Assembly: GCA_053919585.1 (NCBI GenBank)
Contig: CM132807.1
DNA: 64,000 bases
Reading direction: 5' to 3' (one strand)
From: Euprymna scolopes
Taxonomy: Eukaryota
Position numbers and translations under genes: made by a program. The notes below the pieces were generated by a model, which ran no database searches, was not told where the DNA came from, and saw nothing but the letters and a program-made list of their open reading frames with translations. Position 1 is the stretch's first letter. The number at the start of each line of letters is the position of its first letter. Below are positions 38 to 43,040 of the stretch, piece by piece.

Positions 38-3000
38 CTTCGTTTCTTTTTCTCTCTTAATTTCCCCTCTCTGTCCTGCTCTAAGTAAATCTGTCGACCT
101 AGTCCACAAATTCCAAAATTTCATCATGACAAGTTTCAAGAAAAAATACACGATTAAACCCGGTTCTCCAACTTCCAACGTAGACCCCTACTACCATGTC
201 TCCTTCTCCAACATCAGGGGTCTTCGTTCTAACCTTCCAGAGGTTGAAACCCAATTACAGGAGACTAAACCAGACCTTTTATTTTTAAGTGAAACTGGCA
301 TTGGACAGGCTATTTCCCTAGATGAGTTTGCAATTTCAGGATACTCTAACTTAACTTCTAAATCTGACCCCCAAGATCGCCATGGGCATGGAATATGTGC
401 CTATATTAAAGATAGCTTTCCATGTGGGAGGGACATCTCCAGGGAAGATCCTAACTTACCCTATATGTGCTTCCGGGTTGCTTTAGCTCACACTACTGCA
501 TTTATATTTACTCTCTATCGCCCCCACAACAGCGGAGTTACTATCTTTCAAAGCATATCTGAGAAAATTGACCAAGTCTTTTCTACTTATCCTTCAGCTA
601 ACATTCACGTATGTGGAGACTTCAATGTTCACAACGTCGAATGGTTGACCCACTCAAACAAGACCGATGATGAGGGGAGGTTCTGTCATGATTTCTCCAT
701 TGCCTATGACCTCACTCAGATTGTTCAGGAACCTACCCGTGTGCCCGATAATGACGGCCAGTATGCGAGCCTACTAGACCTTTTTCTCACAACTTGCCCT
801 GAACTATGTTCAGTTTCTGTTCTGTCGCCTCTTGGATCTTCCGACCACTCTGTTGTATCAATTAAGATAAAAATGAAATGTAATAAGTCCCCAGACGTAC
901 CTCTTCATCGTACAGTATATCGATACACTAAGGCTGACTGGGATAGCTTCCGTACATTTATATCTGATCTACCTCTGCATTCCATGTTTAAAAAGGATGT
1001 GTCCTCTATAGTATTAGACCTAACTGAATGGTTAATTGTAGGTATTGACCATTTCATACCCTCTAAAAAGTTTCAGAAAAAACCTAACAGCCAGCCATGG
1101 TTCTCTCCAGAATGTGCTGCTGCCATTGCGCACAGAAATCACTTTTTCCACTGCTTCAAACGTAATAGATGTATGGAAACTAAAGCCGTTTTCAGGACTG
1201 CCAGCAACCATTGTAAGAAAGTAATAAGGAACGCAAGAGTGTTGTATGCTAAATCTGTTAAGTCCAAAGTAGCTGAGCAGAGGCTTGGTTCCCAACAGTT
1301 TTGGCAAATAGCAAACAGAATCCTGAATAGAAGCGTGTGCTCCATCCCAACTATTATCAATGGACCTGAGGTAATCTCGTCAGCATCAGACAAAGCCAAA
1401 CTCTTTGTCAAGAACTTTGCAGCTAATTCTACCCTTTGCGACCAAGACCGCCAACCTCCAATATTTCCTCCTGTATCAGAAAACACGCTATGTGATATAC
1501 GTATATCTGTACGTGATGTTGCGAAGCTAATCAAAAACCTTGATTCGAGTAAAGCAACTGGCCCTGATGGTATTCCAATTATAGTACTCAAAAAACTTCA
1601 ACTTGAATTAGCGCCCATACTTACAAAACTGTTTAAACGTTGTCTTAAGGAGAATAGTTTCCCATCTCCCTGGAAAATCTCATCAGTATGCCCTGTATTT
1701 AAGAATTCAGGTGATCGCTCATCCCCCTCTCAGTACAGGCCAATAAGTCTCCTGTGCGTCATGAGTAAGTTGCTAGAATCTGTGTTAAATACAGAAGTAA
1801 TCAAACATCTCAACAAAAATAACCTTCTTAGTGACACTCAATATGGTTTCCGTTCTGCTAGATCTACAGCAGATGTCCTTACAGTTATATCGCATAGGAT
1901 TAGCAAATCTCTCGACGGTGACAATCTTTCTAGGGCAATTGCTCTTGACATATCTAAAGCCTTTGATAGGGTATGGCATAAAGGTTTACTTCATAAAATC
2001 GCTAGCTATGGTATAGCTGGAAAAGTCTTCTCAATTATTAAATCATTTCTTTCTGATAGGTTCATAAGAGTAGTAGTTGAGGGGCAAAAATCAGAAGCTC
2101 ACAGTATTAATGCCGGTGTCCCTCAGGGATCCATCCTGGGCCCAACTCTTTTCCTGATCTACATTAATGATCTTCCAAATCATATCCTTACATCATTTGT
2201 AGACATTTATGCTGACGACACTACCATTTATGGTACCACATCTAAGACAGTAAACGACCAAGTTCTCTCCAATTCTCTCTCCTCTGATCTTGAGCACGTA
2301 GTACAATGGGGAAAGGAGTGGCTGGTTACTTTTAATGCATCTAAAACCAAGCTTCTCTCTTTACATCATCAACATTCTAATTCACATTTGTCATCAATTG
2401 AAATGAATGGCTCTCGTCTTCAGGAGGCCTCAAGTTTTGACAAGCTTCTGGGCTTGACCATTACTCCTGATCTTAAATGGAACACGTATATCAAATCTGT
2501 TGCCAAGGCCGCTGGAAAAATGGTGGGATCTTTCTATCGATCCAGTAGATATCTCACTGCTGATGCTATTCTCTACCTATATAAGAGCCAGGTACGTCCA
2601 AGGATGGAATACTGTTGCCACGTCTGGGCAGGAGCTGCTAGAAAGGACTTGTCCTGCCTTGATAGAGTTCAAAATAGACTTCGTAGCCTCGTAGGAGATG
2701 TCCTTTTCTCCTCCTTGCAACCTCTATCTCACAGAAGAGATGTTGCGAGTTTGTCTCTGATGTATCGTTATTTTCATGGAAAGTGTTCAACTGAGCTTCA
2801 ATCTATGGTCCCCCCTCGCCAAACTTTCACAAGAAACACTCGTCTAGCTGTAAACACTATCAATAATTTCCCCCACTCTTTATCTGTGCCTAAACCTAAA
2901 CGTAGATTCCATGAACAAAGCTTCTTTCTTAGAACTGCACGCCTGTGGAATTGTCTTCCGTTTTCCTGCTTTCCGGCTGACTACAATATGGTTGTGTTCA

Positions 3001-6240: not shown

Positions 6241-7079
6241 GAAAAATATAACATGGAAATTACATAATTGTCGATGCACGTTCTTACACGTAATAGAAAA
6301 TTCAAATGTATTATAAGATAATATTTATTTCAAACTAATTTTAACATGAAAACATACAAATAGTTTTAAAACTTTGTATATACATTTTTTATATATCTTT
6401 TAATAGGCTTATTTTCCATGACTCAATTAACTCTATGACGCGCGTATCATCTTCATTTTCTTTCCCTTCTCTTTCTCAGAGATTCTAGACTAATTAAACC
6501 ATATGACAGGCAGCAGATGGTCACTCTCTTCCTTCTTTCTTCTTTTTTCTTTCTTCTTCTCTTTCCCTTACGCGCAGTTTATTTCCTTCTCTCTATATCC
6601 GTATATTTCTCCCTCTTCTTCCTAGGTTAGTAAACGCGTGTCAAGTCATTTACGTGTAAGAACGTGCATTTTTAGGGGCGTGTGTGTTGGGTGTGTGTGT
6701 GTGTGTGCGTGTGTGTGTGTGTCTGTTGTTACGTCGGGCTACCGGACAGCCGTTTAAGTGTCATAATGTTCTTGTTGTTGTTTTTTTAAAAAATCCCTCC
6801 CATACTAACTTAATTCCCACCCTCTCTATAAAATGTATTAAGTGGATTGCTACTACCACCCCTCTGGTTTTTGAGGGTCGGGGCCCGATTCTTTTTCTTT
6901 ATTTATTTCAGTATCCAAAATGTAATTGTCTAGTTTAGATGCTTGAAAATACCATAAGGTTGAAATAAATTATTGCATCGACAATTATGTAATTTCCGTG
7001 TTATATTTTTATGTTATTGCTCTGTTTACCACATTGAGCTCTCATACCCGGATTTCCTCCTGGAATTATTCCATTATAA

Positions 7080-32780: not shown

Positions 32781-33095
32781 AAAACTTCTGGCCATGATGG
32801 AGGGGGGATTACAGATTGCTTCTATGATTTCAAATGATTTGCAAGAGGAGACTTGATTGGGAATATTTCTCATATGCTATATCTCTCTCTTTGGTTTTCA
32901 TACATAAAGTAAATTTCACAGTGTATAAGGATTATTTGATAATGGAGATATTCATAATCATACTCTGTTTCAAAAAAATAAGAAGATATAACATATGAGA
33001 AATATTTAAGATCAAGTCTCCACTTGCTGTTATTTCAGATCATTTGAAACACTAGCAGCAAGATTTAGTCTCCCCTCCATCTAGGCCAAATGTTT
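32781..33095. repeat. ~110-bp imperfect inverted repeat (foldback MITE core) inside direct repeats 32580-32730 / 33284-33445
   Basis: GGAGACTTGAT..AATATTTCTCATATG pairs with CATATGAGAAATATT..ATCAAGTCTCC. Confidence 0.7.
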
Positions 33096-34299
33096 NNNNN
33101 NNNNNNNNNNNNNNNNNNNNNNNNNNNNNNNNNNNNNNNNNNNNNNNNNNNNNNNNNNNNNNNNNNNNNNNNNNNNNNNNNNNNNNNNNNNNNNNNNNNN
33201 NNNNNNNNNNNNNNNNNNNNNNNNNNNNNNNNNNNNNNNNNNNNNNNNNNNNNNNNNNNNNNNNNNNNNNNNNNNNNNNNNNTTATCTCAACGACTATTT
33301 ATCAGAATTTAACAAATAAAAGTTCATTGGAAAGCTGGAATTGTATTGTGGGTAATGTGGCATTTGCTTTTAAGTTCGCACATTAAAGGGATCATCCATA
33401 TTCTAGAGCCTATTACTGGCACATTTTTACATCTATAAAATATTTCGGTAAAAGGGCTGTATCGTTTCACCCTTAAAATCCTTTAAAATTATCACTACAA
33501 TAGGTTTTGGGAGGTGCTGAAAACGAAAGTAATGTTTAAAATTCCAGGAAACGAGGAGTTTCTAACATATGAAAAATTATAGTTTTAAAAAGTTGGGGAT
33601 CACTTTTCTACATTAATTAAACGAAAAAAAGATAACTCATTTCTGACCACTTTTTCGTGGGTCTGTTATTTTTAGGGTTAGGGTTTATAGTGGTATGGTG
33701 GGCCAACACAAACCTACCTTACAAACTTGCTTTCAATGGGTTTTCGGGCGTGCTGAAAATATCGCATTTACATTTTCTGCAAATAAATATTTTCGTAATA
33801 TTAGCAAAAATACGTGCGCTTGCATACAAAATAATGGCCATCACTTATAATATAAAGAATTACGTTGATTAATACTTAAAAAATACTTATTTGCAGGAAA
33901 TTTAAATGCGATATTCGTTTTAAGCACACCCCAAAATCTATGAAAAACAAGTTTTTTAAGGTAAGTTTTGTGTTGATCTACCGTGTCACATTTACCAAAT
34001 AAACACCGACACTAAAATAATAACGATGCACCACCACAAAAAGTTGCCTGTAAAGAGGGTGTTTGTTTTACGTTAAATGATTATACAAAAATGATTCCCT
34101 ACTCTGGAAGTGTAAGCCATGTTTAGTCTCAGAACAATTTCCGATGGTTCGTTGTTCTACACAAGTCCTGGGAGGTGACTGATTCGCAGTAGACAGTTCT
34201 CGAGTTGGAATCCAAAGAGCTAAAGATTCTTCCCGTGTTGACACGAAGAAAACATATGCGAAATTGCTACGGAAAGGTTTAATATTTATGGAGCAATTC

Positions 34300-34410
34300 T
34301 GGTTTCTGATTGGTTGGTAGCAGAACGTGAATTAATTCGATTCGTCAGTTCCTAGCAGCATCGGTTATAAATAGAATCTCCCGACTGTGCGGGATTATAC
34401 CCCATTATAC
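34300..34410 (+). promoter_or_regulatory. Pol II-type core promoter: reverse CCAAT, TATA box, candidate initiator
   Basis: ATTGG at 34309-34313, TATAAATA at 34366-34373, ATTATAC at 34394 and 34404. Confidence 0.55.
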
Positions 34411-34779
34411 TTCCTTTATGATGGGGTGTCTCCCAGCGGCTTCGGCTGCAGGGAGACAGGGTAGTACCAGTCAAGGATTCGTCACTTGACACTCAGCCCA
34501 ACAGGTGAGGGGCCGGGAACCGGCCCACCAGCTGTTGGACTGAGGTACACCGCCTGGGTAATACCTAGGAGGTCCACCCTCCCAGGCCTTGCCACCGGGC
34601 TTTCCGGTGGGGCAAGTTTATTGCTTGCTGCCTGAGGCGCCCCGACTGGGGAATGCCGACGGGGTTACTCAGGCAATTTTTAAAATTGCAGGAGTGCCCC
34701 TCCTTTAGGGGAGCCTGCGGGGTTCCCACTTTCCGGCCTTGTGCCACATTTTGCTGAGGTGGGCAGCAAATAAATATCT
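34399..34779 (+). ncRNA. 381-nt GC-rich multi-hairpin non-coding unit with a Tx1-type 3' tail (SINE-like)
   Basis: At least nine consecutive hairpins. Ends GGCCTTGTGCC..hairpin..AATAAATATCT, like the LINE end at 40485-40535. Confidence 0.7.
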
Positions 34780-34932
34780 ACCCCATTATACTGCTGTATT
34801 ATGGGATGTGTCTCCTACCGTCTTCGTTTTGTAAATGCAGGAGTGATCTTCCTTTAGGTGAGCCATCTTTAGATTCCCAGTTTCCCGGCCTTGTGGCAAA
34901 TATTGCTGATGTGGGCAGCAATTTAAATAACT
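34780..34932 (+). repeat. Internally deleted, diverged second copy of the 381-nt unit
   Basis: Matches the first ~50 and last ~95 nt of 34399-34779. Confidence 0.85.
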
Positions 34933-35162
34933 ACCCCATTATAATGCATTGTCATTTTGGTAAAATATTCTTTTGTACTTCTGCTTCTTATTGTTATCAC
35001 TGTTGTTGTTATTGTCATTGCTATTGTTATCAATACGACGCCGGATTTTTTACCAAGCTGTTTTCCTGTTTGTTTTTTTTTGTTGTTGTTGTTTTTTTAC
35101 TGTTATTTTAAACAGTTTTTGGACTTTTTTTCTTTTTCGCCATTTTTCTAAACTGTGTTGCT

Positions 35163-36650
35163 ATGACTACTTCTGTTAGCCAGATGTCTGTGAATATACC
35201 CGTTAAGACTGCAATAGGAGTGGAGGGGGTTGCTTCAAGCAATAACTGGAGTAAGCCACCAAAGATAGATATTAACGTTGAGGATTTTATTGCAAAAGCG
35301 AAATATTGCTTGCATTTGGCCACTGATAAAGAAATTACAATTGACATACTAAAACTGTAGGAAATACAGAAAAAATGCTTAGTAATTTTTATCGTGGACA
35401 GAAAGATCAAAAGAGTTATTCGGGATATTATAAATTCCCCGCTGGCAACTGCTAGATACAGACCAACACATCTTGTTAAATGCAAATGCTATAATACATG
35501 GAGCGCATTATTTAGCTCGGCACAGGATTGCCTTACCCTCTCACAGAAGGAAATTATAAGAGCAAATTATATCCTTAGATCACAGTACATGGGCAAAAGA
35601 AGAATAACAGTGCCTGTGTTCCACGTCCGCCCTCACGTGGATGGGAAATACATTGGGTCCTTCCTTCTAAAATATGAAGAGATAGCATGAGTATCATGGG
35701 ACTTGGTCATTCGAAATCTTATTAGATTAAACTTTATTAAACATGCCATATTTTCTGGAAGCAGGCGAAGAATGGCTGCCTATCATAGTGGCCGGAATGC
35801 GGCCTACGTGCTGGAATTGCAGCGAAATAGGACACCTTACTTCAAAAATAACAACACAGCGCCAAACTTAAAATCCAGAATAGGACAACACCTAATTGTT
35901 CAAATGGCTGTGAATAACCCCCTTCTTAAAAAAACAGCGAAAAGGGAAAACCCTGGCAAATTGTAGTCGGCAAGAAGACGCCTGTCCGAGTCTCGCTTGA
36001 GAAAACCAGAGAAGAAGCGATGCTGGAAAATGACCCCGGTGCTGCCAAATATGTGGAGATTGTAAATCTCAAAAAAAAATTGATGCACCCATATCCCCCA
36101 GCAACCCTCAATCCCCTACTCCTAAACAGACCACCACTCCTCAATGCCCAATAAACCCCATCACCCAGACACTCACGAAATCCAAAACACGTTCACCGTC
36201 TAAAATGATGCCTCCTCCTGTCGCATCTCCTGTCCCTCAGAACCCCCCCAACTAATCTCTCTAAACCCTGTCAAGAAACCCTTCTCCCAATACACCCCTG
36301 TACCTTGCACATTACCTCTCTTGCATCCCCCGTAAAGACCCCACCTGCTACCAAAATTGATATTGAAAAGAAAACCCTCCTGGGACAAGAAGAGAAGATC
36401 GCAATACTTATTTGGCAGAGATCTGTAAGATTAGGGACCCCCAAATTAATAATGCCTCTTACTTCAAGAAGGTCGATTTATCAAAATTATTAGAGTTCAG
36501 GGGGGTGGCTGATAACCCAATTGACGATCCTTCGAATTTTCCCAAGGCCAAGAGAGTTCTCACGGTCATACGAAAAAAGGAGGAAGCAAAGAACCTATGG
36601 CCACTGCTGGAAGAAACCGATAAGTCGTTTAATCTAGCAGTGCCCTTTTA
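35163..36650 (+). pseudogene. Disrupted Tx1 ORF1
   Basis: Zinc-knuckle remnant RPTCWNCSEIGHL (~35800-35840) followed by a Pro-rich region. Confidence 0.75.
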
Positions 36651-36876
36651 AAGACACGGACATTAAGAACTTAAGAAAATGTTGTGTGGGCCAGGTCCCT
36701 GTCAAAATGCATCCCTCCCTCTATAGGATTGACAAACTAACAGACCTTTCGCATGTCTGCGGTATCTCTCGTGACGGTCATCGACACTTCGATAGGTACT
36801 CATTTCCTCACGAGAGCCATCGGCACGCTTACGTCCGCGATATTTGTTTCTAGTTCTCAACCCTCAAGGCACAATC

Positions 36877-39800
36877 ATGGATCTCAAGCTTGTATGAATT
36901 TCCGAGAACTAAGGGCCGACTCGGGAAAATTGCGCTTGGGTTTGGACCTGCAGCACCTTGGAGTGGATATTTGTTGCGTGCAGGAAACACACTTTATTCC
37001 TGGTAACCATTTACGTGCGCTGTCTAAGACCTTTTGTGCTCACTCAACGTACTTTAATTTTCATTCGAGAGGGGTTTCCTGGCTAGTTAAAAGGTCTTTA
37101 GATGTGTCGTATGACCCGTGTTACATGAACCTTGAGGAAAGACTGTGTGTTTTGGATGTTACCATAAAGGGAAAGGCTTTTCATTTTATCGGGGGTTATG
37201 CGCCCGATAGCCACGTTGCGCGAGCTGCCTTCTTTCGGCGAATTGAGCAGTCTATGTATACTTCTCGAACGGTTATCTTAGCGGGAGACTGGAACGCGGT
37301 CCTGGATCCCGAGTTAGATCGATTATTACCATCTAGGGGAAATAACAGAGCTTGGGATGCTTTTTTATTTCGTGAATTTGTGAGCAAGTTCGATCTTATC
37401 GACAAATTCCGAAATGAAAAGCCCCGTGCGTCAGTGTTGACTTGGACAGGTAGACGCGGCTCCGGTCTGGTACAACTCTCGAGTTGTATCGACCGGCTCT
37501 TAGTAAGGCAAGTCGACGTAGGAGTATTGAATTGCCCAAATTTCCACAATATAGTTTACTCGGATCACAGACTTATCCGTGTACGGGTTAACTTAGATAG
37601 ACTTAAGCCTAGATTAGCCGGTTATTGGAAGCTCAACACGTCGTTTTTCGACGTGAAGGGCTTATGTGACGGGCTACTACTAATCCTAAAAAGGGAACTT
37701 ACGGATGCAATTATTGGGAATAAGTGGTGAGTAAAAATTAAGGAAGTCATTAGATCCTTGCCTGCCAATTTTAGCAAAAGACTCGACCTAGAATCTAGGG
37801 CAGTTAAAGCGACATTAGAGTCTAGATTAGATCGAGCAAGGAGGATTGTTAGTGTTTATATAATTAAGGCTTAGCTTGCCTCCCTTACTGAACAGAAGCA
37901 CCAATCTTTAGTGATTAGGGATAGGTTAAAAAGAATGCCCCAGGAAGCAAGAAACATGGCTGCTGAACTGCGTGCAGAAGAATTTCGGCAACCTGCTGAT
38001 AGGCTCATCGCTCATGTCACATTGCCGGACGGCTGTACCGTGACCACAAACATTGCCGGGTGTGCTGGAGGCGTTTTGGTCATTTCCAGGGGCTTTTTTC
38101 CATGAAACCCGATCTTTCATCATATCTTTCGACGACTTAAGTGGCTAGGTGCGAAGGTGGCATAACGGAGGATAAAATAATTGAAACCTTGAAGCGGGTC
38201 GGTTTTAATAAGTCTCCGGGAATCGATGATCTGCCCTACGAAGTGTATTTGAGGTTGTCGCACATCATTATTCCCTTGCTGACGGTTTTAATTAACCCAT
38301 GGTTTAGGAACGGCTCAATCCCCAAGTACTTTACCATGGGTGCCGTAAAGCTTGTTCGCAAAAACAAAGATGGTTTGGATGGGATAGGGAATTATCAGCC
38401 CTTGACGATGCTAAACGCTGAGTTAAAGATTTTGGTCAAGATTCTCGCAAATCGTCTGCGGTTTGTCCTGGCTCGTCTTATTAGCCCCGAGCAAACATGT
38501 GCCGTGAAGGGCAGGACAATCCAAGAAAACTTGGACGCGATACGCTTGATGATAGAAAAAGTCGACACTGAGGCCGCGCTTATTCATTTAGATCAGTCTA
38601 AAGACTTCGATAGGTACTACATTGGTACTAGGGGGCTGTTTCGTCGGCGGCCGGTTTTGGCCCGCAATTTTGCTCGTGGGTTCATCTTCTCTATGCTAAC
38701 CCCGCGGTGATGGTAAAAGTGAATGGGAAGAGGTCGAGACCCCTCAGTCTGTCACGTCTAATTCGCAGGCTATGGGTGAATCCGGTCCTACGCAGGATTA
38801 CTTTACCAGGTGCGGATACTCAGGTAAAGTACTCCGCCTACGCCGACGATGTAATAGTGCTTGTAACGAGCAATGCTGAGATTAGTGTCGTCGGTGTAGA
38901 AATCAGATTGTATGAAACGGTAACAGGGGCCAAAATTAACTGCGACGGTTTTGCGCATCGGTGCCTGGAAGGGTATGCCCCTTAAGGGACCGTTTAGTTA
39001 GAGCGACGAGCCTTGCAAAATACTCGGCGTTTGGTTTTGTCCTGACCTCCAGCTGGTGAAAAATTGGTCCGAGGGTCTGAAAGCGGTACGGTCCGCAGCC
39101 GCGCTGTGAATCAGTAGAAACCTTTCATTAAAGGGGAGAACGAAGGTGTGTAATATCCACATCTATCCAATCTTTATTTATCGTCTATCAGTTCTTCCAA
39201 TCCCGTCCGATACTCTGCTATATCTGCAAAGGACTCTTTTCAACTTCTTATGGCTTGAGTTTCTCTCAAGAGTGAAGGAAAGCCTCTCTAATGCTCTGCT
39301 GTTGTCTCGAAAGGCATTATATCGGGTTTTAGTGAAAGGGTCCGTAAGGATGTTATCGGTGAAGGGCTCCCTTTGACGGACCGGCAGCTCCGCTCAATTT
39401 GGGTTGGCCGCCTGGGTCGGGGTGTCTCACTAACGATGAGGCTTCCCTGGCCTGGCTGGTAATTCGAGATGCTTTCTGGGTCGGTAAGAGACTTTATTCA
39501 GTTGGCTTGGCAATTTCGCCTATTTGTAAACGGTGCGGCGATGAGGTCGAGACTTTATGTCACGCCTTCGTTTATTGTCGCATCGTGGTGCCGCTAATAG
39601 AGTTTGTTACAGGTCTCATGGTTCGCATACTGAACATATCGTAACTAAATTTGGTTCCTATCAATGTCTGTAGCAATTGGACGCCGAAAACAGATAGGCT
39701 TAGAAAAGAAATGTGCCTGATCTTGCTAGCGGTTATGGAGGTTCTACGGATCTGAAGACTTCGCTCCCCTCGACCTTATACGAATATTCCGTTATCATTT

Positions 39801-39900
39801 GAAGGTTCGTATCAAGGCCGAGAGAGTTAAACTCTTTTCCTCGGACTTTGTTGGGTGAGAGAAGCAAATTTTAACTGGTTCTTGGATGTGCCTTAGAGAA
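36877..39900 (+). pseudogene. Disrupted Tx1 ORF2 (APE-RT-CCHC)
   Basis: CVQETH, GDWN, SDH, YWKLN, KSPGID, YQPLTMLN, DQSKDFD, YADD, CKRCGDEVETLCHAFVYC. Confidence 0.92.
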
Positions 39901-41035
39901 AAAGAATTTTAACTAGCAGAAACGAAGTCAGCTCTTACTCGCTTTTAGTTCAGAGTAGGTCACGCTTTAGAATAGAGTAGGACCAGTTTTGTAGGCCGTT
40001 GTGTTCATAACCTAGCTAGTGTGTGAAAGTGATCATTAGGCCCCGTTTTATATTTGTCCCGGGGTTTTTGGCCCCATTCCCCTCCACAGTTAGGTAACAG
40101 ATCGCTTGATTTGGCAGAGATGCTGGTTCCCTTTCGAAGTTTTCGAAAGAGGTGCTGTTCGGGCCCACATCACCATTTCAACTGGCAAATCAACGTATCT
40201 GCCACAGTTTAGTAAGTGGGGGGCCTTTCGTTACTAACATTGTACATAATTCATTTATATATTGTATTATATAATTTTTATATTCCAAATCCACCTTTTT
40301 CTTATGGATTTTAATTAGGTTATCATAATATGATGTTCTTATGGTGAGTGCTGAAGGGTTTATACGCTGATGGACGTATAGTATGAATGTGGTATTGTGG
40401 TGAAAGTAGAGTGAAAGTAGGAAATAGTTAGGTTAGATTAGTTAGTATTAGTCAGCAGAGATCGTCCCTCCCCCTCCCATGTTCGGCCTTGTGCCAAATT
40501 TTTCTATTTTACTGTCAAAATTGAAAATAATATCTACCCTATTAAAATAATATCTACCCTATTGTAGTGCAAAAATGTTGTAATGCCCACTTTTCGAAAC
40601 TATAATTTCGATATCGCTTGAAAGCTACTTGTTTCTTGAAATTTTAAACGTTATTTTTGTTTTCAGCATTTTCGATTGGACAAAACGTAATTAAAACGAT
40701 TTGTTTTTTTTCACTCTTACAGTCAGCTTTGAATAGATCCCTTCAATCCACCATTTGAAAAAGAGGTTATTCCGAAATATATAATGGAAGTTATAACATA
40801 AAATAGAACCCCTACAAGTAAGATACTTATGCGTAATACAATTAAATATATATATAGAGAGAGATATATATGTATATACTTATTGATTTGCAAATTGTCT
40901 CATGTTTTGTCTTCCGTCCTCAACACCAACTAGATCAAATCCATCGCATTATGATAGCCTTTTAATCGCTTCAACATGCCTATCCCACACACAGCTTTAA
41001 GCAAACTGCATCTACTTTCAAGCAAACTACGTCTC

Positions 41036-41094
<59 letters not shown>

Positions 41095-41095
<1 letters not shown>

Positions 41096-43040
41096 TAGCA
41101 GAAGTGTCCGTCGTTGACTGGGTTCAAAAACAGCCTACAGAAAATGGACTGTGATTGATGAAAGTCTGATAGGTTATGAAAGGAGGGGGTTGTAAAGAGA
41201 TAGGTTTTGATACTAAAAAATTTTACCCGAAGCAAAATACGATGAAAGTAAAGATAATTTTCGCGAAAATAATTTTTTTATATCAACTTTGTTTCCATTC
41301 GTAGCCAAGAGTGACCCAAAAAAATAATGTTTCCTTACAAAGAGAAAATGTTATATATATAATAATATAAATACACAATAAATAAATGTTACCATAGTCA
41401 ATAAAAGTTATTTTTATGGTAGAAAAGTTCATTGGTTTGTATTTTTAAGTAGTTTGTAATTTTTTTTTTTAATTCACAAACCGGTTTAAAAAAAATCAAA
41501 ATGGCAGCGACTTTGAAATGGAGAGCCCCGTTTTCAATTTGAAGGACGGGCACCTTAGCATTATGTGTTAACAATTTAAGAGAATTCCCTCAACGTAAGG
41601 AATATTTATAAACATATTTTAATGTTTTCCGTTATTTTGTGCTTGAGGAATATTTGATTATGGCATGTGTAGTTTATATAAAAATTCATCTAAGTAGTTA
41701 TTGCCTCAAATTTCGTTTTAATTTCGGTTCGCTGAAATTATTTCAAGTAAAGAGCATTAAAAACTATTTTAAAACAAAATAAAACATGAACTGAACTTTT
41801 ATTGACTATGGTAACATTTATTTCCTGTATATTTATTTTTTCGGGTAGCCGTTTGTTGTCTTTTCTACTAAACACTATTACTAAATATATCTGCTTAACA
41901 CTCTTACTAAATATATCGACGAAATATTGAAAAACAAAGAAACAAAAACAGTTTGGAAAAATAATGAAGCTTTACTTACTTTAGTAAAATAATCTGAAAC
42001 AGCAAAATGAGATCTTAAAAACAAAACATGTAATTACTTTAGTTCTTTAAAGCAAAGAATCGATATAAATATGAATAAGAAGAAAATGGCGCCCTTTTCA
42101 AGCAGAACAGCTTCGTTTCAGTTTTACAGTATTGAACGGTGTATTATTGCGCCGTCGGATTCAGGGTTGTACTCCTGTACTGTAAAGAACACGCAGAAAG
42201 GGTTGTAATCAACTGAATTCCTTCAAGTACACTGACAAAAAAAGCTTAAACAGATATATAAATAAAAGTAAAACGGTTATTTAAATGTTTTTTAAAAGAC
42301 ACGTAATCACGTGAGCCGTTTTTTTCCTTCTTTTGATACGATAACAAGTAACGTTCTTATTTTTTATTATTTATCCATTTATCTATTTTCGAAAGAGTGC
42401 CATGTGCACGTGGAGAAGGAAAAAAACAGAGCTATGCAAAATGTATGTCGAGAATATCTAAATTTCCGACTTGTTTTTTTGGTTTTCATTTTAATAAGAA
42501 CGCGAATTTATGAGGTGAATTTATTCGACACAATATGATTCAACTCAAAAATATAAATAAAAGCTAACGTGAATTAAGATTAAAGTTAAGGTGTTATTGT
42601 GGACCCTCACCCCTTTTAAAAAACCTTGTTAAACTTTGTGACATATTTACATTCTATGGAGGTCAGGCGCGAACGAACACAATAATTTTATTATACCGTA
42701 TTTCTTCAAACTGAAACATAATTATCAAAGTATACTTACGCAGATAGATATGAAAAGTATTTGGTAAAGTTTGTGCCATATTTCCATGGAGTACAGGCGC
42801 GAATGCAGACCCCAGAATTTTATTATACCATCCCTATTTAAGTTGAAACATACCTATCAAAGTATTCTTATGTACATCTATATCAAAAACCCTTGTAAAC
42901 GGTTTTTTTCATTTTTTTTATTTCCATACTTTGGGGGGCAGGCGCGAACGCAGACCCCACAATTTCAATGAATCACCGTTCTGCCAGATCGAACATACCC
43001 ATTCCTGATCCTTGATACATCTTCTATGATTATATATAAT
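41095..43040 (-). mobile_element. Old non-autonomous Helitron with internal inverted and tandem repeats
   Basis: CTAG plus degenerate hairpin at 41095-41122. Inverted repeat 41366-41409 / 41794-41836. CAGGCGCGAA units at 42664, 42794, 42939. 5' end uncertain. Confidence 0.55.

What the first reader, a model, noticed from the sequence alone, without database searches (positions are those of the whole stretch)
34105..40563. Promoter followed by a head-to-tail array of a structured RNA unit, its deletion derivative and a Tx1 LINE, all joined at ACCCCATTATA
Seen: CCAAT and TATA boxes, then three units starting with ACCCCATTATA (34399, 34780, 34933). Each ends GGCCTTGTG(C/G)C, a second hairpin and AATAA..CT, followed by the motif again (ACCCTATT twice after the LINE). 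Known: many Tx1-clade LINEs are target-specific, and SINEs borrow LINE 3' tails. Inference: a site-specific LINE and a non-autonomous partner insert repeatedly at a Pol II start site, regenerate the target and use the upstream promoter. The partner lacks obvious tRNA-type A/B boxes.
Basis: partly seen in the sequence, partly recalled or inferred. Interest (0 to 1): 0.8.

Follow-up and report, generated by a model that had tools for sequence, protein, structure and literature searches.

The report
Site-specific LINE and partner stacked in LTR
A mollusc jumping gene of the L1/Tx1 type and a 381-base structured passenger RNA element insert again and again at one short site near the end of another mobile element (a copia-type LTR), rebuilding that site each time; this is a new example of a known lifestyle, and the idea that they borrow the LTR's promoter is still untested.

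Summary
The motif ACCCCATTATA starts three different elements at 34399, 34780 and 34933, and ACCCTATT occurs twice after the LINE.

- **Elements.** They are a 381-nt structured unit, a 153-nt internal-deletion derivative of another unit subfamily, and a 5.6-kb degenerate LINE with APE, RT and zf-RVT domains. All three share a 3' module.
- **The "promoter".** 34103-34398 is not a cellular gene promoter. It is the left arm of a dispersed ~325-bp repeat with thousands of candidate copies and 5-bp target duplications. I identify it as the LTR of a Ty1/copia-like retrotransposon; its right arm is 40556-40585.
- **Site specificity.** Elsewhere in the 5.9-Gb genome, unit arrays at 10 of 11 loci begin at this LTR position, and all nine where the downstream end could be read end in the LTR tail. 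12 of 12 LINE 3' ends of the matching tail type abut the motif or a degraded form.
- **Target regeneration.** The 12-16 nt after the junction match within a locus better than between loci (p < 1e-4), so each insertion rebuilds the target.
- **Classification.** ORF2 resembles human L1 ORF2p far more than R2. Tx1-clade membership could not be tested.
- **Promoter use.** A canonical TATA (-33) and an NF-Y-type CCAAT (-90) lie upstream, but polyA RNA-seq showed no transcript start at the junction.

This closely parallels Tx1L/Tx1D and Tx1-Mar/SINEU. Other first-reader notes record the same stacks elsewhere in this genome.

The parts
34098..34102 (.). Left copy of the putative 5-bp target-site duplication of the LTR (CCTAC). 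The right copy is CCCAC at 40586-40590.
   Evidence: Read. Other solo copies have clean 5-bp duplications: AGGTC, ATTTC, AAATG.
34103..34398 (+). Left arm of the host repeat, a copia-type LTR read in antisense.
   Evidence: >3500 first-look candidate copies; the 39 other copies scored are 93-96% identical. Boundaries come from the alignment of 12 copies. Two subfamilies were found.
34306..34317 (+). CTGATTGGTTGG, an inverted CCAAT box of NF-Y type at about -90 from the junction.
   Evidence: Sequence. Kept in 20 of 22 aligned copies of both LTR subfamilies; the other two carry a single substitution within ATTGG. Function not tested.
34366..34373 (+). TATAAATA box at -33 to -26 relative to the junction at 34399.
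   Evidence: Sequence. Intact in 19 of 22 aligned copies of both LTR subfamilies. No start of transcripts seen in polyA RNA-seq.
34399..34779 (+). Full-length 381-nt structured non-autonomous unit. It begins with target copy ACCCCATTATA, which forms the 5' hairpin 34399-34427. The 3' box is at 34734-34746, followed by a terminal hairpin and the tail ...AAATATCT.
   Evidence: >1000 candidate copies at 90-98% identity, many in head-to-tail arrays. MFE -197 kcal/mol, z -7.6. Compensatory pairs in 10 of 99 consensus pairs. No Rfam family.
34780..34932 (+). 153-nt internal-deletion derivative of a second unit subfamily: 5' 47 nt plus 3' 106 nt.
   Evidence: The two halves match the same copies about 235 nt apart elsewhere. 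The deleted form is found only in the window.
34933..40535 (+). Full-length but degenerate APE-type LINE of the L1/Tx1 superfamily. It starts with ACCCCATTATA. APE lies in ORF 36753-37727, RT in 38141-38982, zf-RVT in 39399-39641. The 3' box is at 40484-40496, followed by a hairpin and the tail ...AATAATATCT.
   Evidence: Pfam hits. A full-length relative scores 1.6e-68 against human L1 ORF2p and 2e-20 against R2. No close copy in the genome: best 76% aa, 84-89% nt at the 3' end.
40536..40555 (+). ACCCTATT followed by a 12-nt duplicate of this LINE's own tail (AAAATAATATCT). Either an extremely 5'-truncated second insertion or abortive reverse transcription with an 8-nt target duplication, or replication slippage.
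   Evidence: Sequence.
40556..40585 (+). Right arm of the host LTR: the target site ACCCTATTGTAGTGC plus the LTR terminus AAAAATGTTGTAATG. In copia sense this is the LTR 5' end, TG...
   Evidence: Matches the tails of empty and filled copies.

Best explanation
34103-40585 is one copy of a copia-type LTR, a dispersed ~325-bp repeat. It has been hit at least three times at the same internal site by members of a site-specific retrotransposon system.

The autonomous member is an APE-type LINE of the L1/Tx1 superfamily. ORF1 has a CCHC knuckle; ORF2 has APE, RT and zf-RVT. The non-autonomous member is a 381-nt highly structured RNA element. It shares with the LINE only the 3' module: the box CGGCCTTGTGCCA, a hairpin, and an A/T-rich tail ending in T.

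Inferred mechanism:
1. The LINE endonuclease nicks the bottom strand immediately left of ACCCC, in the context ...AT|ACCCCATTAT....
2. Reverse transcription is primed there on an RNA recognised through the 3' module.
3. The top strand is cut 8-16 nt downstream, so the motif plus a few following bases is duplicated.

Every insertion is therefore followed, and in full-length copies preceded, by a fresh target. This allows nested and head-to-tail stacking; unequal exchange then expands some arrays.

Shown here: the site specificity, the shared 3' module, the local duplication of the target, the identity of the host repeat, and structural constraint on the unit RNA. Inferred: the nick positions and the order of steps. 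Unproven: the source of transcription.
For: **Unit arrays.** At 10 of 11 independent loci on different chromosomes, unit arrays start exactly after LTR position ~300. All nine of those arrays whose downstream end lay within the fetched locus end with ACCCCATTAT plus a few variable bases plus the LTR terminus (T/A)AAATATTG(C/T)AA(C/T).

**LINE 3' ends.** 12 of 12 sampled LINE 3' ends with the ...AAATA(A/T)(A/T)T(T/C)T tail are followed by ACCC... or a degraded form. Nine of these have a recognisable LTR tail and one is followed by a unit. A further full-length LINE (ORF1 of 601 aa; an open frame of 1766 aa was reported at its ORF2, not re-checked in the fetched locus) sits in the same site.

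**Independent insertion.** The same unit subfamily (97-98% identical) sits in two LTR subfamilies that are only 82-87% identical to each other.

**Truncated copies.** 5'-truncated 48-50-nt unit tails abut the next unit precisely. A 5'-truncated LINE sits directly after a unit.

**Local target duplication.** The target copy of the last element and that of the LTR tail agree at 63 of 98 variable positions, against 42.5 in shuffles, p < 1e-4.

**Shared module.** The unit shares only a 24-32-nt 3' box with LINEs. The 3' hairpin shows compensatory changes.

**Host is a copia LTR.**
- gag, integrase and RVT_2 lie on the opposite strand next to it in four loci.
- Read in copia sense, five loci show a polypurine tract AAAAAATAGGGAGGA followed by TGTTGCAAT.
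- Solo copies have 5-bp duplications.
- One locus shows LTR-internal-LTR by coordinates.
Against: - The window LINE itself has no close relative (at most 76% aa, 84-89% nt). Its membership in the site-specific lineage rests on its own junctions and on more distant copies.
- Some LINE relatives with the tail ...AAATAAATACC are followed by other sequences (TTCTTC-like), so specificity differs between lineages.
- One large array (C1) is not followed by a clean LTR tail.
- Higher-order periodicity in arrays shows that part of the stacking is DNA-level duplication rather than new insertion.
- Sampling was limited to a few dozen loci out of thousands.
- The LTR ends ...TCTAGA rather than CA, and a pair of LTRs around one internal region was seen only by coordinates.
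Confidence: 0.85

Rival explanations
1. Promoter capture. The antisense TATA/CCAAT of the LTR starts Pol II transcripts at the A of ACCCC. The RNA is target copy + element + target copy, and this terminal redundancy guides both junctions. The system depends on the LTR for expression.
For: - TATAAATA sits at -33 and an NF-Y consensus CCAAT at -90. Both lie in the most conserved ~150 bp shared by the two LTR subfamilies.
- Full-length units and full-length LINEs begin exactly at ACCCC.
- The unit has no Pol III head and carries a conserved T4-5 run.
- The 5' hairpin uses the target copy as one arm, with compensatory changes.
- LTR tails after arrays sometimes carry a unit-type variable segment, as expected if the RNA 3' end reads into the next target copy.
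Against: - PolyA RNA-seq from three raw-read runs shows no clustered starts at 34399. Depth drops from about 120-210 to 10-17 across the junction, and both mate orientations are equal.
- The same CCAAT box also fits the LTR's own sense promoter: a TATA-like ATAAATATTAAA lies about 30 nt downstream in copia sense. Conservation is therefore explained without an antisense promoter.
- Units inside arrays have no TATA upstream.
Confidence: 0.35
2. Hitch-hiking. Most occupied sites are not independent insertions. Instead, LTRs that already carried units were copied by copia retrotransposition or by segmental duplication.
For: Five loci (L002, L003, L006, L020, L030) share one LTR variant with an internal duplication of positions 28-94 and carry arrays. 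In one search the 36 other copies of the internal part plus LTR that were scored are 92-96% identical to the query.
Against: - The number, subfamily and order of elements differ between these loci.
- The same unit subfamily occurs in both LTR subfamilies.
- Solo LTRs with different flanks and their own 5-bp duplications are occupied.
- LINE 3' ends and 5'-truncated copies obey the same junction rule.
- Target copies match locally.
Confidence: 0.1
3. A satellite or self-cleaving RNA repeat (retrozyme-like) that is amplified at the DNA level or through circular RNA, with the LINE nearby only by chance.
For: Head-to-tail arrays of up to about 23 units with higher-order periodicity. Very stable fold.
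Against: - No hammerhead, HDV-like or other ribozyme family at E <= 1.
- Arrays always sit at the same LTR position.
- The 3' module is shared with the LINE.
- 5'-truncated copies exist.
Confidence: 0.03

Closest known systems
Tx1L / Tx1D of Xenopus laevis (Tx1 clade; cited in PMC4494074)
   Same: An APE-type LINE inserts at one specific sequence inside another dispersed transposable element, so the element finds thousands of harmless targets.
   Different: In Xenopus the host is a non-autonomous piggyBac DNA transposon. Here it is a copia-type LTR. Here a large structured non-autonomous partner also uses the site, and tandem stacks form.
Tx1-Mar LINEs with SINEU partners, and Tx1-8_Crp / Tx1-4_AMi, in crocodilians (Kojima 2015, PMC4494074)
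   Same: The LINE and its short partner share a target preference for one transposon family. Some Tx1 families target LTR retrotransposons. That paper already discusses transcription from the flanking target as a possible strategy.
   Different: SINEU has snRNA-derived heads. The unit here has no recognisable RNA-gene head, is 381 nt and almost fully paired, begins with a copy of the target that forms a hairpin, and builds arrays of up to about 23 units. The host phylum is Mollusca.
R2 / R1 with SIDE-type non-autonomous derivatives in rDNA (own knowledge; R2 co-transcription is cited in PMC4494074)
   Same: Site specificity, dependence on target sequence at the RNA ends for precise junctions, and non-autonomous partners that share the 3' end.
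   Different: R2 uses a restriction-like endonuclease and a 5' ribozyme, and its target is a cellular multicopy gene transcribed by Pol I. No ribozyme was detected here.
SLACS / CZAR / CRE and NeSL-1 in spliced-leader RNA genes (own knowledge, not checked here)
   Same: Insertion a few nucleotides downstream of a Pol II start site, so that the host promoter can drive the element. This is the closest precedent for the promoter-capture idea.
   Different: These have restriction-like endonucleases and their target is an essential cellular gene family. Promoter use is not shown here.

Membership tests
Target-specific APE-type LINE, L1/Tx1 superfamily | ORF2 with an N-terminal APE endonuclease, RT, and a C-terminal CCHC (zf-RVT) domain; ORF1 with a CCHC knuckle | tested here: met
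   Window LINE: Exo_endo_phos 6e-13, RVT_1, zf-RVT 1e-8 in broken frames. Full-length relative L071: APE 5e-15, RVT_1 2e-29, zf-RVT 3e-7, ORF1 zf-CCHC.
Target-specific APE-type LINE, L1/Tx1 superfamily | Closer to L1-group ORF2 than to other LINE groups | tested here: met
   Human L1 ORF2p 1.6e-68 over APE plus RT, against R2 proteins at 2e-20 or weaker.
Tx1 clade proper | RT-domain phylogeny or RTclass1 places it with Repbase Tx1 references | not testable with these tools
   No named Tx1 reference sequence could be obtained. Homologues in the protein collections carry no informative names. L1-Tx1 LINEs are annotated in coleoid cephalopods (PMC8967140, PMC13282606).
Target-specific LINE (Kojima's criterion: same sequence in more than 20% of flanks) | Flanks of independent copies are the same sequence | tested here: met
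   12 of 12 sampled 3' junctions of the ...ATATTT/ATATCT tail type are followed by ACCC... or a degraded form, and 9 have a recognisable LTR tail.
LINE-dependent SINE (stringent type) | 3' tail shared with the partner LINE | tested here: met
   Only the 24-32-nt box plus the terminal hairpin and tail are shared. The hairpin shows compensatory changes.
Classical SINE | Pol III head derived from tRNA, 7SL, 5S or snRNA, with an internal promoter | tested here: not met
   No Rfam match at E <= 1. A T4-5 run is conserved in all 20 aligned copies.
Self-cleaving ribozyme repeat (retrozyme, HDV-like 5' ribozyme) | A recognisable ribozyme core | tested here: not met
   cmscan against 4227 families at E <= 1 gave only microsatellite artefacts.
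Ty1/copia LTR (identity of the host repeat) | Adjacent internal region with gag, integrase and RVT_2 in copia order | tested here: met
   zf-CCHC, Pol_BBD, gag_pre-integrs and rve at L072:2423-3844(-), RVT_2 at 1755-2099(-). Shared upstream homology in four loci.
Ty1/copia LTR (identity of the host repeat) | Polypurine tract directly before the LTR 5' TG, and 5-bp target duplications | tested here: met
   AAAAAATAGGGAGGA|TGTTGCAAT in L005, L006, L017, L018 and L096. TSDs AGGTC, ATTTC, AAATG.
Ty1/copia LTR (identity of the host repeat) | Two direct LTR copies around one internal region; LTR ends in CA | tested here: inconclusive
   An LTR-internal-LTR order was seen only by coordinates, at C40:17885323-17889168. 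The L072 copy is truncated. The inner end reads ...TCTAGA, not CA.

The most novel reading that the evidence does not exclude
The LTR supplies an antisense, NF-Y/TATA-driven Pol II promoter that fires exactly at the insertion site. The LINE and its promoter-less partner would then be launched as terminally redundant RNAs (target copy, element, target copy). The 5' hairpin, made of the target copy paired with its complement inside the element, would take part in recognising or re-joining the target. This would be a retrotransposon that parasitises both the DNA and the promoter of another retrotransposon, with an RNA-assisted junction step.
Probability: 0.2. Interest if true: 0.65.

Novelty: new member of a known kind. 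Interest (0 to 1): 0.45.

Why it matters
This is a clean, high-copy and apparently young example of a target-specific L1/Tx1-type LINE with a dedicated partner, found in a mollusc with a very large genome.

- Thousands of LTR copies act as a safe landing pad.
- The target duplication is measurable, at 12-16 nt.
- At least one inserted copy has long open frames, though ORF2 integrity was not confirmed. Whether endonuclease specificity can be tested with natural sequences depends on finding a copy with an intact ORF2.
- It explains a class of 383-bp tandem arrays and 6-kb LINE arrays that would otherwise be annotated as satellites.
- If the promoter-capture idea holds, it would show how a promoter-less, Pol III-incompatible RNA can persist as a mobile element.

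Tried and rejected
- **Rfam search** of 33000-42000 at E <= 1: only (TA)n artefacts. No ribozyme, snRNA, tRNA, 7SL or telomerase-like family.
- **Spliced-leader or snRNA gene as the target:** rejected. Similarity between copies ends 30 nt after the site, and the repeat has its own target duplications.
- **SINE or MITE reading of the host repeat:** replaced by the LTR reading once gag, IN and RVT_2 and the polypurine tract were seen.
- **AATAAA as a conserved poly(A) signal of the unit:** rejected. Other subfamilies have ATTTAAATAACT or AATTAAATATAT.
- **The common left boundary at query position 1231:** I first read this as a 5'-truncation or transduction series. It is simply where the L072 copy itself is truncated, so nothing was inferred from it.
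- **RNA-seq lay-down**: gave neither a start site nor strand information.
- **Naming the LINE clade** through protein collections and the ESM Atlas: returned no informative names.
- **Further fetching of genome loci:** Junction sampling therefore stayed at a few dozen loci.

Full report
**What is in the window.**

ACCCCATTATA begins three consecutive elements at 34399, 34780 and 34933. ACCCTATT occurs at 40536 and 40556. All five are on the + strand, each immediately after the 3' end of the preceding element.

The bare count of the 8-mer in 64 kb (6, against 4.8 expected) is not remarkable. The placement is.

The three elements are different things:
- a 381-nt unit (34399-34779) that folds to -197 kcal/mol, z = -7.6;
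- a 153-nt unit (34780-34932) made of the first 47 nt and last 106 nt of another unit subfamily, unique in this deleted form;
- a 5.6-kb LINE (34933-40535) with APE, RVT_1 and zf-RVT in broken frames.

After the LINE come ACCCTATT, a 12-nt duplicate of this LINE's own tail, and ACCCTATT again. A single local duplication cannot explain the stack.

**The "promoter" is the arm of a dispersed repeat.**

34100-34398 has more than 3500 first-look candidates in the 5.9-Gb genome; the 39 other copies scored are 93-96% identical. Aligning 12 copies shows an element of about 325 bp. It starts at TCTAGAAG and ends at ...GGGATCAT ACCCCATTAT(a few variable bases)AAAAATATTGTAACA, flanked by 5-bp duplications (AGGTC, ATTTC, AAATG).

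Six of the eleven other copies are empty, four carry units at the same point, and one carries another insertion ending in the same kind of tail.

In the window the missing right arm is 40556-40585. The whole of 34103-40585 is therefore one copy with nested insertions, flanked by CCTAC and CCCAC.

**The repeat is a copia-type LTR.**

- In four loci on four chromosomes, a second subfamily of the repeat (82-87% identical) is the outer terminus of a longer shared sequence.
- That longer sequence encodes, on the opposite strand, zf-CCHC, Pol_BBD, gag_pre-integrs, rve and RVT_2.
- Homology stops exactly at the repeat's outer end.
- In five other loci, the sequence just beyond the outer end reads in copia sense as a polypurine tract, AAAAAATAGGGAGGA, followed by TGTTGCAAT.
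- In one search, 36 further copies of the internal part plus LTR were scored; they are 92-96% identical to the query. One locus shows LTR-internal-LTR by coordinates.

The LTR status is well supported but not complete.

The LINE and units sit in antisense to the copia element, about 15-30 nt from the LTR's 5' end.

**Site specificity.**

The unit has more than 1000 candidate copies at 90-98% identity, often head to tail with a 381-383-bp period.

At 10 of 11 independent loci the array begins exactly after LTR position ~300. In all nine of those arrays whose downstream end lay within the fetched locus, it ends with ACCCCATTAT, a few variable bases, and the LTR terminus.

The same unit subfamily (97-98% identical) lies in both LTR subfamilies, so units moved independently of their hosts.

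LINE 3' ends with the ...AAATAAATATTT/ATATCT tail are followed by ACCC... or a degraded form of it in 12 of 12 sampled loci. Nine of these have a recognisable LTR tail and one is followed by a unit. A full-length LINE sits in the same site; its ORF1 is 601 aa, and one search reported a 1766-aa open frame at its ORF2 that I did not re-check in the fetched locus.

Two full-length LINE 5' ends start with ACCCCATT directly after a unit. One 5'-truncated LINE abuts a unit tail. Unit tails of 48-50 nt abut the next unit. These are the signatures of target-primed reverse transcription at a fixed site.

**Target regeneration.**

I tabulated the motif and the following bases over 45 loci. Copies within one locus share rare variants: ATTAC in L018, ATTATAAG in L052, ATTATACTCCG twice in L035.

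For 14 loci I compared the 16-nt target copy of the last element with that of the LTR tail. They agree at 63 of 98 variable positions, against 42.5 after shuffling loci, p < 1e-4.

Each insertion therefore duplicates 8-16 nt starting at ACCCC. From this I infer a bottom-strand nick left of ACCCC and a top-strand nick downstream.

Arrays also show higher-order periodicity: a 3-unit pattern on C1 and 1147 bp on C19. Unequal exchange therefore adds to the stacking.

**The partner RNA.**

An alignment of 20 copies at 77-95% identity gives a consensus of 99 pairs, 10 of them with compensatory changes. These are concentrated in the 3' terminal hairpin, an internal stem, and the distal part of the 5' hairpin.

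The 5' hairpin pairs the target copy with a complement inside the element.

The unit shares only a 24-32-nt box with LINEs. It has no Rfam family and carries a conserved T4-5 run. It is not a Pol III SINE.

**Classification.**

ORF2 of a full-length relative matches human L1 ORF2p at 1.6e-68 over APE plus RT, against 2e-20 for R2. ORF1 has a CCHC knuckle. That places the LINE in the L1/Tx1 superfamily.

The Tx1 clade itself could not be tested. L1-Tx1 LINEs are annotated in coleoid cephalopods. Run labels show the organism is a mollusc.

**Promoter question.**

TATAAATA at -33 and an NF-Y-type CCAAT at -90 lie in the most conserved part of the LTR. Full-length elements start at the predicted start site.

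However, the CCAAT box equally fits the LTR's own sense promoter. Three polyA RNA-seq runs showed:
- both-orientation coverage of the LTR arm;
- a drop at the junction;
- no clustered starts.

I put promoter capture at about one in three.

**Comparison with known systems.**

The closest known systems are:
- Tx1L in Tx1D;
- crocodilian Tx1-Mar with SINEU in a Mariner family;
- Tx1-8_Crp and Tx1-4_AMi in LTR retrotransposons.

All are described or cited in PMC4494074, which also raises transcription from the flanking target as a possibility.

This is therefore a new member of a known kind. It is notable for its large structured partner, its long arrays, and the position of its site behind a canonical TATA box.

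Other first-reader notes on this genome describe the same stacks elsewhere.

Noticed in passing
L071, L073, L086-L094 (e.g. C20:77479229-77492416, C18:65711964-65731224): A related LINE lineage with the tail ...AAATAAATACC(T) forms head-to-tail arrays with a period of about 6.1 kb; one copy examined has ORF1 591 aa and ORF2 1154 aa. It is followed by TTCTTC-like sequence or AATTTTTACCCCCA rather than the LTR tail, so it may have a different target, for example a (TTC)n-like one.
   Followed up: partly
L005, L006, L017, L018, L096 (just beyond the LTR tail): In copia sense, the internal region carries CCCCATTATA directly before the polypurine tract. The LTR carries its complement about 15 nt inside. 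This gives an inverted repeat around the PPT/LTR boundary and a second, inverted copy of the LINE target.
   Followed up: no
unit positions 10-20 (window 34408-34418) and LTR tails: The loop and distal stem of the unit's 5' hairpin are far more variable than the rest of the unit, yet keep pairing (C-G, A-T, G-C). The variable bases in LTR tails resemble the 5' half of that loop. This is partly explained by the target duplication. The compensatory pattern is not fully explained.
   Followed up: partly
window 40704-40899: Another repeat with more than 1000 candidate copies at 78-85% identity. Some occur as adjacent inverted pairs elsewhere, which suggests a foldback or MITE-like element.
   Followed up: no
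window 41029-41109: A (TA)n microsatellite gives sub-threshold hits to several miRNA families. These are artefacts.
   Followed up: yes
window 6920-6990: Another first-reader note (s1-268998) reports a hammerhead-like ribozyme here. I did not examine it. It lies outside the finding, and no ribozyme was found inside the finding.
   Followed up: no
L052:1888-2296 (-): One unit copy carries a 26-nt insertion made of two extra tandem copies of a 13-nt segment (GGGGAATGCCGAC, three copies in all) inside a stem region.
   Followed up: no
C38:60258788-60259235, C2:125912480-125912665 (coordinates only): Partial or inverted LTR fragments lie inside or next to copia internal regions. These could be rearranged or nested copies.
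   Followed up: no
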